Below, one piece after another: positions 40,641-47,323 of a stretch of DNA of 64,000 nucleotides (position 1 is its first letter; each line of letters begins with the position of its first letter). Made by a program: the position numbers and the translations under genes. Under the pieces are notes generated by a model. That model saw only the letters and a program-made list of their open reading frames with translations, searched no databases and was not told the DNA's origin. The stretch is from the NCBI GenBank assembly GCA_964247055.1, contig OZ176053.1, forward strand, positions 12,028,001-12,092,000, read 5' to 3'. The DNA comes from Paragordius varius. Taxonomy: Eukaryota; Animalia; Nematomorpha.

Positions 40641-41108
40641 TATCTAATTATCCTCATCTCAAATCCCGCCTTTTCCTATAAATTTTAACTAATACAACAG
40701 GTAAAATGTATATTATAGTTAAATATGAGTAGTTAACTTTAAAAAACTTTCAGGCTATCTTAGTAGCAAAAACATTTATTTCAATTTAAATATCAAATGT
40801 TCGTTTCATTTACTAAAGCTTCTGGCCTCTAGAAGTCCCAAAACTGTAAAAAATATGAGCTCTTTTATCCAATACATGATAATTAAATTTTAACTGAAAT
40901 AACCTCCAAAAATATATTTTATTTGCAAAATCGAGCTCTGGGGTATAAAACTAGCCCAAAGGTAAATTTCGACAAAAAATTGTTAAAGGGATCTTTTTTA
41001 TACATTTCGGTGCATCAATGTTATGAAGTGCAAACTTCTGCAGAGGTTTCAATTTATTCCATGTTTTTAGACATTTTTGATTTAGTACAGGTTAGCGTCC
41101 CCAAAGTA

Positions 41109-41693
41109 TTAACACTTGGATACAACACATTCATTTTAGTCCTTCGATCAAATTGGGGTAGTTAAATAACCCAGGCCTACTTAAATAAAAATTCTTTAAA
41201 AAATATGGAAGGAATTTAAACCATGGCAAAATTTTGCACTTATATAACATTAATAAAGCGAAATATATAAAAAAATTTTAATAAAAAATACTTGATATTA
41301 CTTATTTTAAGCTAAATCTGAAAGGTAAAAATTTAATCAACATGACATATGTGCATTTGTTAAATCTAAATATAACGCAAAATAAACCACTTTTTCTATT
41401 TTCATCAATTTCAGATGTAATTTAAATAAAAAATTAGCTTTAGTTTTACCCTTAAAATTAAATTAAGACGATATTTTGCAAAAGCAAAATAAAAATGGCG
41501 TCGAAGTAATTTGACATGAAACTTTTTTTTCAAAACAAAATTTTATTTAGATATTTTGGCATATTTATATAATTTTTATTAGGATAGAAGCATAAATTTA
41601 AATTGGGACCGTTTATTTCAGTAGTTTTTAAAAATTCCTAATTAAAATTTAGTCTGGGATATTTAGATACCCCAATTGGAATCGAAGTGTTAA
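41109..41693. mobile_element. piggyBac-type MITE (TTAA-flanked), inverted copy of 6911-7496
   Basis: TTAACACTTGGATAC ... ATCGAAGTGTTAA; colinear with the reverse complement of 6911-7496. Ends ~110 bp upstream of the RILPL coding region. Confidence 0.8.
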
Positions 41694-41800
41694 TGTGTTT
41701 TATCCATTAATTTATAATTTAAATTTTCAACATGTGTGTATCAAGCCAAATACATTCATTACACCCACATGAAAATTTTTAGCTATTGATTTTTTTATCC

Positions 41801-44800
41801 ATGTTTAGTAATGTTTTGAGAAACGAGCAGCTACAACCTGATAATCAAGAATTTGATTCCGATTTAATGCCGTCTTATATCAAAAATATATCTCAACTTA
41901 CCGTTGCGGATGTTTATGAATCTGCTGCAGATATCGGCAAAGAATTTGAACGTTTAATTGATGTGTATGGAACGAATGAATTTATGTCGTTTATGCCTAA
42001 AGTTGTGAAAGTACTCGAGGAATTAGAGGCGTTAGCTGCGAGAAATGAACAAGACAATTTGGAAATTACAAATTTGACTTATGCTTTAGAGAAACTGGAA
42101 AACGAAAAATCCGAAAGAAATTTGGAAAAAATTAAATATGAAAAGGTATAATACTTTTTAAAACCATAGGAACTTGAACAAATGGAAGATGACTGGAAAG
42201 GGGAAGCCAAACAACTTGCACAATTGGTGGAGCGGTTAAAAGACGAAAATTTTAAATTAAGCAAAAGATTGGAAGAGACATCCAAATCTTCGACCAAACC
42301 TCTTTCCTATTCTAATGGAACTACTCATATAAAACTTACAACTCCAGATAAATCACCTCTTATAGCCAATCAATTAGGTTTTTTATATTCATTACATTTC
42401 AATTTTTAACCAAATGCGTAAATTTCTACCGTAATTTTAAGTTTAAGGTAAAATAAACCCCTTATAATTATTAAACTATCCATAATTGCATATTTGAATA
42501 TTACATATATTTTTTTGGTTTAACAATTTTAAATTGTTTTTTATTGACATTATTAAATAAAATTGTTTTTTACACTTAACCTACATATGAAATATATATA
42601 TTGGCATTATGTATAATTTTATTTATACGTGTATCGGAATTAATTAGTGTATTGATGAGATATGATATCTTTTATGTAAGACATTATAGGAAAGTTAGTT
42701 ATATATTGGAATCCAAAATGGAATACATCCTCATTTTATTATTGGAGACAATATATAAAATACTTATTAAAAAAATATAATTTATTTTACATAACAACAT
42801 TTGAGAAATATCTTTTACTAACTTTAAGTCTACTTTTATAAATTATATTTGCTTTTAATAGTGATAAAAAATGTAAAATAATTTGTTTAATAAATAACTA
42901 AAATATAATTAAACCAATTAAATACACTTTTAAATAGTTTTGATTTTAGTTTTTCCAACAAACACTTAAATAACTATATACTAGTTTATAATAATATGAT
43001 GTGTATGTTTTTTAAGAGTAAGAAGACTGTCAAAATGTTTGTTTTGTTAAAAAATCGATTTTTTACTTTCCTAAAATCAAAGGGTATTTTTTATAAATAG
43101 GACATTTTAGCAATACGAATTATTATGATTGTTGGATTGTCTAAGCATTTTGTTTAGCGTAACAACATAGACCTGTCTTTGGTATAGTTATTTAAAATAA
43201 ATCTTGGCCATTTTTTGCCTTTTTTGTTTTAATTTTTAACCGATAAATTATTTTATAGATATACCTGGTGGTCAGTAATAATTGTTTAAATAAAAATGTT
43301 TTTATAGCTTTATTTAACAACAGCACATCGAGAGGTATTTCTTATTTTTGATATGCGATTTTGTAAATTTTGCATAATGTTTTTTCACTATTTGAGATCG
43401 ATTAATAACTCCTTCATAATGGATGGATAATTTTAGGACTCCATATTCGGAGTTTTATATCCACGAAGTAGCTTCCTCCATAAATTACGATCTTTACATT
43501 GTTCTGTGGAAAGCCTACTTTGATTCAAGTCCATTTTTATATTATCATTATAAGAAAAGAGTGGTCGTCCCTTTCTTCTATTGCCATCAACATTAATGTT
43601 ATCAACAGTTTTTAACGGATGGGTGGCGTCTCTTCTCTGAGTATGACCGTATAGACGCAATCTGTTAGTTTGAATTATATAATCGATTTTATCGTTTTCT
43701 TTAATGAAAATTGGTATTTCTGGTGTACGAAAGCAGCTTTTGAGTATTCGATTCTCACTGGTTAGGAGTTTTGTTTGATTTGTTTTGTTTAATGCCCAGG
43801 TTTCAGAACCATAGGTAAGAGCAGGTCTTATTCCTGCCTTGTAAAGATACCATTTATTACGATTGTTAACATTTTTGTTTTGGAAAACATATTTTAATTG
43901 ATTATATTTTATCCAACCTTGTTGTATTCTTCTTTTGATAGCCTTTTGTGGGCTTCCCTGAGATGATATGACATCTCCTAGGTATACGAAAGAGTCAACC
44001 AATTTGATGTCATGTCCATCACTGTTAAGTAGCTTTGGTCGATTAAAATTTTTATTGCTTGGGTCTAAGCAATTTAAGCATTTAAAATTTATAACCTATT
44101 GCCACCTCCCCGTGGTGTTGGCTGGGGCATGAAAATGCGCTAACGGCAAAGGCCAGTTTTCTAATGATCTGTAAAATCATTAGTTGTACACAAGGGCATG
44201 TGTTACGTAAAAAATTGCCTCAATAAACCATGAAGTATAATAATATCCTTCATAATAATTTAATAAAATAATAATATTTTTAGAAACCCTAACCAAAGAT
44301 TTTGAAGTTGTCAATATGCTCGGGAACACGGTCGAAAAATTGGAAAAACAATTAAAAATACGCGATGAACAACTGTTAAAGAAATGTTCGGAAACTGAAA
44401 CGGTGAATTTATCAAAATTACCATTTTTTAATTTTAAGTTTATAGATCGTAATTTGTATGGATTTGTGGTGAGTTAACCCATTAACCTCATTTTTATCCA
44501 TTATGGTTTTTTTGTATGAAATTTTAACATGCACAAACCGGTATAATGTGAATAATCTGGTAGAAAACGCCTTATTAACAATCATTTCATTTTATAAAGA
44601 TTTTGGTCAGAGGTGTCCAAAACAAATATCTTTGCGGCTGCTTTTATAATTTTTGGGTTTTTTCTTTTATTTTGAATTTTGGATAATAAATCTTTTAAAT
44701 AATTATAATCTTTGATTGAAATCCTATTTAATATTTTTTTGAGCTCTTCGTACAGGAAAAAACATGTTGGATATCGATTTAGGGGATTTTTATTGCGATT

Positions 44801-47323
44801 TTTTATGGCGACCAATTAAATTTTTTACAAGATTTTTTATTCTATCTCATGTATTATCAGGATGAGTTTAATTAATATTTAAACCGATAGTTATCATTTT
44901 ATTACATATTTTCCCCAAAAATCTTTCTAAATATTACATTTAATTAACCTTTTAGTTATACTAACAGAATATTGTTTTTATCAGATGGAAAATCAAGTCA
45001 TGCGTTTATCCAAAGTGTGCCAGGAATTGAGGCGGAAAAATCAAACTTTGCAAAAACATTTGCACGTTCTGATTGACGATAAGACTGATCAACAACTCGA
45101 AATTCAGGAAAAAGATCATCAATTGTTGGAACTTAAAGATAGACTTCACACGTATGAACCAAACATTTTGGATTCCTTAATGGATAACAATACTGAATCT
45201 ATGAATCAAGTATGCTTAATATTTAGCTTTTAATACATAAAGTTTAGTTAAATTGTATTTCCTGTGAGTATTATTAATAACTTTTAAAGTGACGGCATTT
45301 TCTAATCGAGTAACTATTTACAAAAGTAATATATGTAATGGTTATTAAATAAATGTTATGTATATATGGTTATAAAATTTGTTGTAATGTTAGATTTTTT
45401 ATATATATAAAATTGTTTCGAGAGTATATTAATAATCATTAATTTTTAATATTTTTTAATCCCAATTTTACAGTCATGTACACTTACAGTATATGCGAGA
45501 TGCTATAAAAAATTAGCAAAACTCCCCGTTAAAAAACGATCAATTAAAATGGTAAAAAGCATGTGAAACCAAATTTGTAAAGCTTTTAATAAACATTACT
45601 TATCATTACAGAGTATGGTTAGTAATAGCAACACATCCGAAACGAGCGATGATGGAAATAATGTGGCTAGATTCACATTGGCAGAATTGAAAGAACTCAT
45701 TCGCGAAAAGAATGAATATAAGGCCCGTTTAATGGAAGCCGAAGAGGAATTAGCCTTTTTCCGGCCAAAGTTTGAGTTTGGTCTTTTATTTTACTGTGAA
45801 TATAAAAAAAATTGATTTGAAAACGCTATAAAAAGCTCTGTTAAACACTAGTATCCTATTTTTGGATTTTTTTATATTTAATTTTTTAAGTATTTTACCT
45901 AATGATATTTGGGGTGAATAGATAGAGAATCAACCATATTTAACAATTTTAAAAATTTATTATATAGATGAAATGGGGGTATATAAATAGTGGTTAAATA
46001 ATTAATAATGTTTATGACTGTCTAAGCAGTTCTATACTATAGTCTAATATTAAATTTTTACGTTTTCACGATTATATTCTCAATGATTATTGTATTTTGA
46101 TTTTACTAAATTTTGATAAGATGCTATTTGATGTTTAAAAACCGTATGTAATATTTTGTTTAATTATGTGGAATATATATTAAATGATTCAAAACAGGCT
46201 TGGTCAATAAAAAAATATATATTACTATAATAATTTGAAATTCCATTGCAAAAATATGCTCATAAAATCTTAGTAATATCGATTTTATTTAAAACAAATT
46301 TTTTAAATCTTTCTAAATGGCAACAACCCAGAAAAAAATTGGGAAAATAATTTACCCTGATATTGTGTTTGCATTTTTTACAGTCTAATATTATAATATT
46401 AATGCCGGTATATTTTTTTGCGGCGGAGCCATTTATGTTGAATCTTTAGTCCTGTTTTCTTTTTTCGAGCTATTAACACGTCTTTTGCCATATCCAAAAA
46501 CACTATCCATTTTTTTCACAAATTTTTAACATAAATTTATTTTTAATTTTGCTTTTATAAAATATTCAAAAAGTTTTGATTATTGAACCAAAAATATTTT
46601 TCAATGACAATTAACCCAAAGCTTATATCAATTTTTTTAAATCAACATAATTGGTTCATATATTTTTTTTGAATATTTTTTATTAATCCAACTAAAACTA
46701 TAGCGCTATGTATTTATTCCATAATAAAAATTTTGAAAATTATGCCTATAATTTATCCTCATATATTAGGCCAGTAGATAATCAGGTAGGTGCCGACGAA
46801 GAAGAATTGGTCGTTCAAGGTCCCATTAATCGAGAACCCGATGAAAAGTTATATCCTTGGAAGTATAGCGGTTTAAACCGCAAGAAAAATCCACCCTATG
46901 GAATAAGGAGATTGTAATTTTATATTAACTATTAATCTCAATGACTTTGTATATATATGTAATATGGGAAATATTATGTGCGTGCTTGGAAGATTATTAA
47001 ATTGGCACAAAGAAATAATTGTTTGCAATTCAGTAAAAATTGAAATTATAATATAAGACACAAACTTAAACACAAATATTAAATTTTAAAAAAAGACAAG
47101 CATATTTTTAAACATTAATTTAGCTTGATATTTTCATAAATTAAGATATTTTTAAACATGAAATGATTTGTGCAAAATCCATTCTAGTTTTAATTATATT
47201 TTTTATTCTTAATTTTATACATAAAATTATATTTTGATATATAGCTTTAGATGCCTGTTAAACAAAATTGCGCAATCCACGGAATCGAGTCAAAGCAGTT
47301 TTAATTGGGATATTTTAACTTAA
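41801..47323 (+). CDS. RILPL1: RILP-like protein (exons 41801-42145, 42170-42377, 44284-44402, 44985-45209, 45612-45769, 46770-46913, 47245-47323; ~425 aa; start codon uncertain)
   Basis: RH1 domain LTVADVYESAADIGKEFERLIDVYG...MPKVVKVLEELE and KELEQMEDDWKGEAKQL; RH2 domain RFTLAELKELIREKNEYKARLMEAEEELAFF; C-terminal VQGPINREPDE...GIRRFFRCL. Junctions keep frame. It could equally be the single invertebrate RILP/RILPL homologue. Confidence 0.92.
43421..44245 (-). mobile_element. RTE-clade LINE insertion (3' end of the ORF plus an inverted ~150-nt segment), flanked by an 11-bp TSD, in RILPL intron 2
   Basis: Open frame 44095 to 43433: FVYLGDVIS...IKRRIQQGW...GIRPALTYGSETWAL...RLRLYGH...GNRRKGRP. 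Short (ATCC)2 tail. TCCTTCATAAT at both 43410-43420 and 44246-44256. Confidence 0.9.
44095..44152 (+). ncRNA. HDV-like (R2/RTE-type) self-cleaving ribozyme core
   Basis: P2 TTGCC (44099-44103) / GGCAA (44145-44149); P3 ACC/GGT around L3 TCCCCGT; P1 3' strand GTTGGCT; P1.1 GG; P4 GCAT-GAAA-ATGC; J4/2 GCTAAC with candidate catalytic C44140. The P1 5' strand is not adjacent (see findings). Confidence 0.65.

What the first reader, a model, noticed from the sequence alone, without database searches (positions are those of the whole stretch)
44095..44157. HDV-like self-cleaving ribozyme core in sense orientation in RILPL intron 2
Seen: an isolated GC-rich island, TTGCC ACC TCCCCGT GGT GTTGGCT GG G GCAT GAAA ATGC GCTAAC GGCAA, that fits the nested double pseudoknot element by element (P2, P3/L3, P1 3' strand, P1.1 GG, P4 with a GNRA loop, J4/2 GCUAA, P2 3' strand). 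Known: ACC-UCCUCGU-GGU and GCUAA are hallmarks of R2-type HDV-like ribozymes; such ribozymes sit at the 5' ends of R2 and RTE elements; and the mammalian CPEB3 ribozyme lies in a host intron. Inference: the native P1 5' strand appears lost, but AGTCAAC at 43993-43999 (antisense RT sequence, ~95 nt upstream) can pair with GTTGGCT. The RILPL pre-mRNA could therefore carry a chimeric, re-assembled ribozyme ~130 nt upstream of the 44283 splice acceptor. The AGTCAAC match alone could easily be chance.
Basis: partly seen in the sequence, partly recalled or inferred. Interest (0 to 1): 0.85.

Follow-up and report, generated by a model that had tools for sequence, protein, structure and literature searches.

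The report
Dead ribozyme tip of inverted retrotransposon
The GC-rich island is a genuine hepatitis-delta-type self-cutting RNA motif, but it is a broken leftover: the flipped front tip of a jumping gene that landed in this intron and lost the 12 bases the ribozyme needs to cut, so it is an ordinary relic rather than a working host ribozyme.

Summary
Bases 44095-44152 (+) carry every element of an HDV-like ribozyme except the P1 5' strand. Rfam's only hit is drz-agam-1, at 20.7 bits, below the gathering score of 37.

Contigs from four public runs show that 43421-44245 is one repeat-family insertion, flanked by an 11-nt target-site duplication (TCCTTCATAAT). The insertion has two parts:
- **3' part, minus strand (44092 to 43421):** the last 219 codons of an RTE-like reverse transcriptase plus a 12-nt 3' UTR.
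- **Flipped 5' tip, plus strand (44095-44245):** joined head-to-head to the first part.

Other copies of the family carry ...GGCCAAC-AAAGT directly before 44095. GGCCAAC is the exact complement of the P1 3' strand GUUGGCU, and only unrelated flank lies upstream of it. The family ribozyme is therefore complete and sits at the element's first base. This copy lacks its first 12 nt.

At least one such site occurs within 200 nt in 39% of shuffles, it is predicted to be largely base-paired locally, and it has G at -1.

Best reading: a 5'-inverted (twin-priming-type) RTE-like insertion carrying a dead ribozyme. It is a new member of a known kind and of low interest. The scan has already noted RTE 5' ribozymes, and one inverted tip, elsewhere in this genome.

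The parts
43410..43420 (.). Left copy of the target-site duplication, TCCTTCATAAT.
   Evidence: It is an exact 11-nt direct repeat of 44246-44256. It abuts the left boundary of the repeat family, which defines independently (depth step; other copies diverge at about 43419-43421). An abutting repeat of 9 nt or more occurs in 0.1% of random position pairs.
43421..44092 (-). 3' part of an RTE-like non-LTR retrotransposon: an open frame of 219 codons (44092 to 43436) for the C-terminal part of the reverse transcriptase, the stop codon at 43435-43433, and a 12-nt 3' UTR at 43432-43421.
   Evidence: The frame is open. There are 6208 relatives at E<=0.001, the best at 29-38% identity, and the full-length ones are about 1000-aa APE+RVT_1 proteins. 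It aligns to residues 797-986 of the 1000-aa P0059. Contigs of other copies run past 44092 into different, conserved sequence, so 44092 is a breakpoint.
44093..44094 (.). Two filler bases (AA) at the inversion junction.
   Evidence: They match neither what follows 44092 nor what precedes 44095 in other copies.
44095..44152 (+). HDV-like ribozyme lacking its first 12 nt (P1 5' strand and J1/2). Present are P2, P3/L3, the P1 3' strand, P1.1, P4 and J4/2, with the putative catalytic C at 44140.
   Evidence: Other copies have ...GGCCAAC AAAGT before 44095.
44153..44245 (+). Remainder of the inverted 5' tip, i.e. the element's 5' UTR, including an ATG at 44230.
   Evidence: Multi-copy contig depth holds up to about 44245. 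One contig is identical over 44095-44246. Other copies continue past 44246 with GAATATGAAAGAAC... instead of the intron sequence.
44246..44256 (.). Right copy of the target-site duplication, TCCTTCATAAT.
43993..43999 (+). It lies inside the antisense RT sequence and is judged a chance match.
   Evidence: 116 such wobble-tolerant sites occur on the + strand of the window. There are 5 in the upstream intron against 4.2 in shuffles, and at least one within 200 nt in 39% of shuffles. Four of its 7 nt are paired with >97% probability locally.
42378..44283 (+). Host intron of the RILPL-like gene that holds the insertion. The flanking exons are 42170-42377 and 44284-44402.
   Evidence: RH1 and RILP domain exons lie on the + strand. 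GT/AG boundaries and frame continuity were read. No transcript evidence was available.

Best explanation
The island is the 5' tip of an RTE-like non-LTR retrotransposon whose RNA begins with an HDV-like self-cleaving ribozyme.

One retrotransposition event put an 825-bp, 5'-inverted copy (43421-44245) into the RILPL-like intron and duplicated 10-11 bp of target. The copy has two parts:
- The 3' part (RT C-terminus plus a 12-nt 3' UTR) lies on the minus strand.
- The element's first roughly 164 nt, minus the first 12, lie flipped on the plus strand, joined head-to-head through two filler bases.

This is the layout expected from twin priming. The second target-strand end primes reverse transcription near the 5' end of the same RNA and runs almost to the ribozyme-generated 5' end, and the two cDNA ends are then joined. 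A template switch onto a cDNA would give the same layout.

Because of the flip, the ribozyme core reads in sense in the host pre-mRNA. The junction removed GGCCAAC-AAAGU, which is the substrate strand of P1 and the cleavage site, so this copy cannot form P1 and is catalytically dead.

**Shown:** the core; the missing P1 strand; the repeat-family boundaries; the TSD; the breakpoints on both sides of 44093-94; and a complete P1 in other copies.

**Inferred:** that both parts come from one RNA or element family; the twin-priming mechanism itself; and self-cleavage by the complete family ribozyme.
For: - **Core and partial Rfam match:**
- **Abutting RT frame:** the RT frame is open up to 44092 and directly abuts the core. 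Its relatives are about 1000-aa APE+RT proteins that end at the same C-terminus.
- **Depth step:** summed contig depth steps up 15- to several-hundred-fold exactly between about 43421 and about 44245 in all four runs.
- **Sequence before 44095 in other copies:** contigs matching rightwards from 44095 carry before it GGCCAACAAAGT (23 contigs, X2), ATCCAACAAAGT (X1) or GACCAACAAAGT (X5). Further upstream there is only non-agreeing AT-rich sequence. In the fourth run, X7, the consensus (4 contigs, agreement 0.57) shows only ...AACAAAAAAAAGT, so the P1 strand is not resolved there.
- **Sequence beyond the other two breakpoints:** contigs matching up to 44092 continue with a conserved different sequence (T[A/G]CATTTGTTAACTTG...). 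Contigs matching up to 44246 continue with GAATATGAAAG...
- **P1 complement:** GGCCAAC is the exact complement, with a G.U at the cleavage site, of GUUGGCU at 44117-23. The duplex energy is -9.4 kcal/mol.
- **TSD:** an 11-nt direct repeat abuts both boundaries. Its length falls in the 10-12 bp range most abundant for RTE-clade LINEs (PMC6007223, citing Ichiyanagi and Okada 2008).
- **Distant relative:** L002 has a drz-agam-1-like ribozyme (25.3 bits) directly before its ORF1/ORF2, with a covarying P1.
- **Independent instances:** 75 of 107 instances of the same 22-nt core have a fully complementary P1 5' strand 14-18 nt upstream of P3. A partner-shuffle control gives 28. There are 17 P1 types. 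The window copy has none in that place.
- **Literature:** HDV-like ribozymes at the 5' ends of RTE elements are reported (PMC3774820 and PMC6765202, both citing Ruminski et al. 2011).
Against: - No full-length copy showing the ribozyme tip and this RT tail in one element could be fetched, so 'one element, one RNA' rests on the shared TSD and adjacency.
- Classic twin priming leaves the inverted and direct segments nearly contiguous in the element. Here an unknown but probably >2 kb internal stretch is missing.
- 5' inversions have been seen almost only for L1 in human cells (PMC4245944).
- The tip has 2-4 times the summed contig depth of the RT tail, and other subfamilies diverge after about 44169. 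The tip module is therefore shared by more than one family, and a two-RNA chimera is possible.
- The first two bases of the family P1 strand are clear only in run X2.
- Both Rfam scores, 20.7 for the window copy and 25.3 for L002, are below gathering.
- No cleavage assay exists for any copy.
Confidence: 0.82

Rival explanations
1. One reading: the truncated core is rescued in cis by AGUCAAC at 43993-99, or by another upstream 7-mer. This would form a chimeric P1 across a J1/2 of about 95 nt, so the RILPL pre-mRNA self-cleaves in the intron.
For: - All catalytic-core elements are intact.
- AGUCAAC can pair 7/7 with GUUGGCU at -6.7 kcal/mol.
- HDV ribozymes work when the substrate strand is supplied separately, and a search for genomic trans-cleaving HDV-like RNAs has been proposed (Webb and Luptak 2018, as cited in PMC6765202).
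- An A-U pair at +1 is seen in 17 of 75 natural instances of this core.
Against: - The match is at chance level: at least one site within 200 nt in 39% of shuffles, and 5 sites in the upstream intron against 4.2 expected.
- Four of its 7 nt are paired locally at >97%, and the proposed pairs have about zero probability in the nested ensemble.
- Without P1 the core is predicted to misfold into an extended P3-like hairpin.
- The -1 base is G, the worst of the four in the genomic HDV ribozyme, and the G1:U37 wobble is replaced by A-U (PMC1874588).
- The arrangement is a by-product of an insertion junction, with no sign of selection.
Confidence: 0.04
2. Two independent events. A sense-oriented copy of the ribozyme-bearing element, or of a short non-autonomous derivative of it, was present first. 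An antisense 5'-truncated RTE-like copy then inserted into it, or a deletion followed, removing the P1 strand.
For: - The tip module is more abundant than the RT tail and is shared by several subfamilies. It may therefore also travel on short elements.
- Nested insertions are common.
Against: - A single 11-nt TSD flanks the pair as a whole, and no second TSD flanks either part.
- TPRT copies keep their 3' ends, but the tip fragment has no 3' end of its own. Other copies continue past 44246.
- Both parts are little diverged from other copies. The frame is open and there are 0-2 differences in the X7 contigs.
Confidence: 0.1

Closest known systems
HDV-like ribozymes at the 5' ends of RTE (and R2, Baggins, L1Tc) non-LTR retrotransposons; Rfam drz-agam-1 (RF01787)
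   Same: - It has the same nested double-pseudoknot layout and near-identical core sequence: ACCUCCNCGUGGU, GG for P1.1, and CUAA in J4/2.
- In the family's other copies the ribozyme starts at the first base of the element, so the cleavage site is the element's 5' end (PMC3774820, PMC6765202).
   Different: - This copy lacks the first 12 nt (P1 5' strand and J1/2).
- It is inverted relative to the rest of its element.
- P4 is a minimal 4-bp GAAA hairpin.
- It scores below Rfam's gathering threshold.
5'-inverted L1 insertions made by twin priming (Ostertag and Kazazian 2001, as cited in PMC4245944)
   Same: - A single TSD of at least 10 bp flanks a 3' segment in one orientation and a more 5' segment in the other.
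- The most 5' base of the inverted segment sits at the internal junction.
   Different: - The element is RTE-like, not L1.
- The inverted piece is the extreme 5' tip and a large internal part is missing, whereas classic cases are nearly contiguous.
- PMC4245944 found 5' inversion almost only with L1 in human cells.
Mammalian CPEB3 intronic HDV-like ribozyme
   Same: It is an HDV-like motif in sense orientation inside a host intron.
   Different: CPEB3 is a complete, conserved, active single-copy ribozyme. This one is a truncated copy from a multi-copy transposon family, with no P1 and no evidence of conservation or activity.

Membership tests
HDV-like self-cleaving ribozyme (nested double pseudoknot) | P3 of 3 bp closing a 7-nt L3 (UCCNCGU), followed by the P1 3' strand and GG that forms P1.1 with the L3 CC. 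| tested here: met
   ACC/GGU at 44104-06 and 44114-16, L3 UCCCCGU, and GG at 44124-25.
HDV-like self-cleaving ribozyme (nested double pseudoknot) | P2 helix enclosing P3, P1 3' strand and P4, with a J4/2 that carries the catalytic C (CUAA). | tested here: met
   44095-103 pairs with 44145-152 (8 bp, one bulge). GCUAAC is at 44139-44, with C44140.
HDV-like self-cleaving ribozyme (nested double pseudoknot) | P1 of 6-7 bp whose 5' strand begins at the cleavage site, just upstream of P2. | tested here: not met
   No complementary strand lies within 60 nt upstream in this copy. The feature is met in other copies of the family, which carry GGCCAAC + AAAGU before 44095.
HDV-like self-cleaving ribozyme (nested double pseudoknot) | Rfam gathering score for an HDV-like family. 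| tested here: not met
   drz-agam-1 scores 20.7 bits against 37. There is no hit at the gathering threshold anywhere in the window.
HDV-like self-cleaving ribozyme (nested double pseudoknot) | Site-specific, Mg2+-dependent self-cleavage. | not testable with these tools
   This needs an in vitro transcription and cleavage assay.
RTE-like non-LTR retrotransposon | A single long ORF of about 1000 aa with an N-terminal APE endonuclease and an RT, ending close to the element's 3' end. | tested here: inconclusive
   Only the last 219 codons are present. The best full-length relatives are 965-1042-aa APE+RVT_1 proteins that align end to end with the fragment's C-terminus. No clade phylogeny was made.
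RTE-like non-LTR retrotransposon | Very short 3' UTR and a TSD of about 7-15 bp. | tested here: met
   12 nt lie between the stop codon and the TSD. The TSD is 10-11 bp (range from PMC6007223).
Twin-priming 5' inversion | One TSD flanks both segments, and the inverted segment derives from further 5' in the element, with its 5'-most base at the internal junction. | tested here: met
Twin-priming 5' inversion | Both segments derive from one element RNA and are nearly contiguous in it. | tested here: inconclusive
   No full-length copy was available. The tip ends at about nt 164 and the tail is the last 672 nt, so a large internal part is missing.
Host-domesticated intronic ribozyme (CPEB3-like) | A complete ribozyme, single-copy and conserved at an orthologous site. 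| tested here: not met
   The core is truncated and belongs to a multi-copy repeat family.

The most novel reading that the evidence does not exclude
The P1-less core, transcribed as part of the RILPL pre-mRNA or its excised intron, acts as a natural split HDV-like ribozyme. It would bind a GGCCAAC-like or AGUCAAC-like strand in cis-distal or in trans and cleave it. Possible targets are the host pre-mRNA or transcripts of the same transposon family. This would be the first natural trans-cleaving HDV-like ribozyme, created by a 5'-inverted retrotransposition.
Probability: 0.03. Interest if true: 0.8.

Novelty: new member of a known kind. Interest (0 to 1): 0.2.

Why it matters
Mainly as a clean negative: a convincing-looking intronic 'host ribozyme' turns out to be a truncated transposon relic.

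It also documents two modest points.
- An apparently young, multi-copy RTE-like family in this genome starts with a compact drz-agam-1-type ribozyme, and its predicted cleavage site is the element's first base.
- An RTE-like element can make 5'-inverted insertions that reach almost to the ribozyme-made 5' end of its RNA. That fits reverse transcription of a ribozyme-processed RNA. 5' inversions have so far been seen almost only for L1 in human cells.

Such inversions are a route by which ribozyme cores land in sense orientation in host introns. Annotators should expect this before calling domesticated ribozymes.

Tried and rejected
- **Minimum-free-energy folding** of 44086-44160 and 43985-44160 gave z about 0. 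This is uninformative for a pseudoknot and was used only to show alternative local pairing.
- **Other copies in the window:** none were found by tblastn or blastn.
- **Close protein relatives of the RT fragment, sought to fetch full-length copies:** the word-indexed search found none. The exhaustive representative search gave at most 38% identity among the longer hits, so the family itself is not in the protein collections.
- **5' regions of seven contigs encoding six distant full-length relatives:** only L002 had a detectable HDV-like ribozyme. P0089 is not on record.
- **Exact 22-nt core of this family in metagenome contigs:** no match.
- **The search of earlier findings by sequence:** blank.
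- **Circular-permutation reading:** rejected.
- **Papers not held:** Ruminski 2011, Webb 2009 and Webb & Luptak 2011 could not be read. They are cited only through PMC3774820 and PMC6765202.
- **RNA runs:** none holding the locus was on offer and all runs were contigs. Expression and RNA ends could not be examined.
Full report
**1. The observation**

On the + strand it holds:
- a P2 5' strand (CCU-A-UUGCC, 44095-44103)
- P3 (ACC, 44104-06, with GGU, 44114-16) around a 7-nt L3 (UCCCCGU)
- a P1 3' strand (GUUGGCU, 44117-23)
- the P1.1 GG (44124-25)
- a 4-bp P4 with a GAAA loop (44127-38)
- J4/2 GCUAAC, with the putative catalytic C at 44140
- the P2 3' strand (GGCAAAGG, 44145-52)

A permissive Rfam scan of 41000-47000 gives one ribozyme hit, drz-agam-1 (RF01787), at 44086-44152 +. 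It scores 20.7 bits against a gathering score of 37, with E=1.2 over all 4227 families. The core columns align almost perfectly and the first 12 model positions (P1 5' strand and J1/2) are unmatched. At gathering thresholds the whole window has no Rfam hit.

The 13-mer ACCTCCNCGTGGT occurs once in the window, against 0.05 expected. A generic core descriptor without the P1 5' strand finds only 44099-44149, and finds nothing in 100 Markov resamplings of the window on both strands. That descriptor was written post hoc. The core is real and is not a chance pattern.

**2. The surroundings**

The host gene is on the + strand.
- An RH1-domain exon lies at about 41786-42145 and a RILP-domain exon at 45615-45815.
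- Exons 42170-42377 and 44284-44402 join in frame (phase 1) across a GT..AG intron at 42378-44283.

The label 'intron 2' is plausible but unverified by transcripts.

Directly left of the core, the minus strand is an open frame of 219 codons running from 44092 down to 43436. It has the FxYLG...YGSETW...GRP pattern of the C-terminal part of a non-LTR reverse transcriptase.
- Pfam does not cover this region.
- An exhaustive HMMER search finds 6208 relatives. The best have 29-38% identity, and the full-length ones are 965-1042-aa proteins with APE (Exo_endo_phos) and RVT_1 domains that end where the fragment ends.
- After the stop codon only 12 nt follow before a direct repeat.

**3. Evidence from other copies**

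Contigs of four public runs were laid on 43000-44600 at 80% likeness. The runs carry coded organism labels A, B, C and D and come from four studies.

(a) Summed contig depth rises from flank level to 15- to several-hundred-fold that level between about 43421 and about 44245. In X1 it goes from about 5 to 65-600. In X2 it goes from about 500-1200 to 44,000-395,000. The stretch is a multi-copy repeat with sharp ends. The tool warns that depth is not copy number.

(b) Contigs that match up to 44092 continue with a conserved, different sequence (T[A/G]CATTTGTTAACTTG...). In ordinary copies the RT gene simply goes on.

(c) Contigs that match rightwards from 44095 carry before it a family 5' end. 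The consensus is ...GGCCAACAAAGT in X2 (23 contigs), ATCCAACAAAGT in X1 (6) and GACCAACAAAGT in X5 (4). Agreement collapses into AT-rich, unlike sequence further upstream. In X7 (4 contigs, agreement 0.57) the consensus shows only ...AACAAAAAAAAGT, so the P1 strand is not resolved in that run.

(d) Contigs that match up to 44246 continue with GAATATGAAAGAAC... rather than with the intron.

GGCCAAC is exactly the strand predicted from GUUGGCU: six Watson-Crick pairs plus a G.U at the cleavage site, at -9.4 kcal/mol. The family's ribozyme is therefore complete and starts at, or within a base or two of, the first base of the element. The window copy lacks its first 12 nt.

**4. One insertion**

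An exact 11-nt direct repeat, TCCTTCATAAT, lies at 43410-20 and 44246-56. It abuts both boundaries that defines independently. Abutting repeats of 9 nt or more occur in 0.1% of random position pairs in this AT-rich window. Its length falls in the 10-12 bp range reported as most abundant for RTE-clade LINEs (PMC6007223, citing Ichiyanagi and Okada 2008).

The insert is 43421-44245 and reads as follows:
- the 3' part on the minus strand (44092 to 43421)
- two filler bases (44093-94)
- element nt 13 to about 164 on the plus strand (44095-44245)

On the element's sense strand this is flank, then the reverse complement of (a..b), then (c..end), then flank, with the 5'-most base a at the internal junction. 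That is the topology of a 5' inversion made by twin priming (Ostertag and Kazazian 2001, via PMC4245944). A template switch of the RT onto a cDNA would give the same product.

It departs from the classic picture in three ways:
- A large internal stretch is missing.
- Only 1 nt of possible microhomology is seen at the outer junction.
- 5' inversions were found almost exclusively for L1 in human cells in the one systematic comparison I could read (PMC4245944).

That the inverted cDNA stops 12 nt short of the ribozyme-defined 5' end fits reverse transcription of a ribozyme-processed RNA.

**5. Identity of the ribozyme family**

A distant relative satisfies it, besides the same-family copies. P0059 is a 1000-aa APE+RT protein with 32% identity to the window fragment over its last 190 residues. 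It is encoded on a 3.4-kb contig, L002. The 5' end of that contig holds a drz-agam-1-like ribozyme (25.3 bits, 75-162) just before a small ORF1 and the main ORF. Its P1 is CCCUAAC/GUUAGGG, and it has the same CCUAUU start of P2.

Scanning public contigs for the 22-nt core with four free positions gave more than 120 metagenome loci and 6 IMG/VR loci.
- Of 107 distinct instances, 75 have a fully complementary P1 5' strand 14-18 nt upstream of P3. The figure is 28 when P1 3' strands are dealt out among instances.
- There are 17 distinct P1 types.

The core motif is thus diagnostic of a covarying P1, and the window copy stands out by lacking one.

**6.

AGUCAAC at 43993-99 can pair with GUUGGCU at -6.7 kcal/mol, but the evidence is against it working.
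- Wobble-tolerant partners are common. There are 116 on the + strand of the window and 5 in the upstream intron against 4.2 in shuffles. At least one lies within 200 nt in 39% of shuffles. A second site, GGUCGAU, is at 44037.
- In the nested ensemble four of the seven bases are paired at >97% with local partners, and the proposed P1 pairs have about zero probability.
- Without P1 the core is predicted to fold into an extended P3-like hairpin.
- The base before the would-be cleavage site is G. This is the least favourable of the four in the genomic HDV ribozyme, where the loss from U-1 to G-1 is more than 25-fold. The G1:U37 wobble is also replaced by A-U (PMC1874588).

In fairness, A-U at this position occurs in 17 of the 75 natural instances, and HDV ribozymes are known to work with a separate substrate strand. 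Activity therefore cannot be excluded without an assay. I put it at about 4%.

The earlier alternative note, a circularly permuted monomer at 44098-44219 (s1-316147), is not supported. No possible P1 partner lies in 44153-44400.

**7. Comparison and verdict**

HDV-like ribozymes at the 5' ends of RTE, R2, Baggins and L1Tc elements have been known since 2010-2011 (PMC3774820, PMC6765202). Earlier notes of this scan report intact RTE 5' ribozymes in this same genome, and one 'inverted 5' tip'. These are leads that I did not check.

This locus is a truncated, inverted copy of such a ribozyme. It is a new member of a known kind and is not a CPEB3-like host ribozyme. Interest is low. The modest added value is the 5'-inverted RTE-like insertion that reaches nearly to the ribozyme-made RNA end.

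Noticed in passing
window 42146-42169: Two in-frame coding stretches of the RILPL-like gene (...KYEK and ELEQMEDDW...) are separated by only 24 nt. The gap starts GT, ends AG and contains in-frame stop codons. If it is an intron it is unusually short for an animal gene.
   Followed up: no
window 44246-44283: The transposon landed only 27-38 nt upstream of the 3' splice site at 44283/44284. The right TSD copy and the AT-rich tract after it now supply the branch-point and polypyrimidine region, so splicing signals may have survived only because of the duplication.
   Followed up: no
window 44095-44190: The ribozyme tip has 2-4 times the summed contig depth of the RT tail. That is the opposite of what 5' truncation predicts. 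Contigs from other copies share the ribozyme plus about 17 nt and then diverge into at least two different sequences after about 44169. The ribozyme module seems to be shared by several subfamilies or by short non-autonomous elements.
   Followed up: partly
run X7 (organism label D): This run has no contig on the unique flanks of the locus. It does hold copies of the element with 0-2 differences over 150-185 nt. Nearly identical copies therefore occur under at least four organism labels. Possible causes are the same species complex, mislabelling or recent horizontal spread, which is known for RTE.
   Followed up: no
L002 75-162: The ribozyme of this distant RTE-like relative would have C-G, not G.U, at the first P1 pair (CCCUAAC/GUUAGGG), and only one C in L3 for P1.1.
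   Followed up: no
Several contigs have two copies. In L128 (294 and 1139) the two copies share P2 but have different, each self-complementary, P1 helices.
   Followed up: partly
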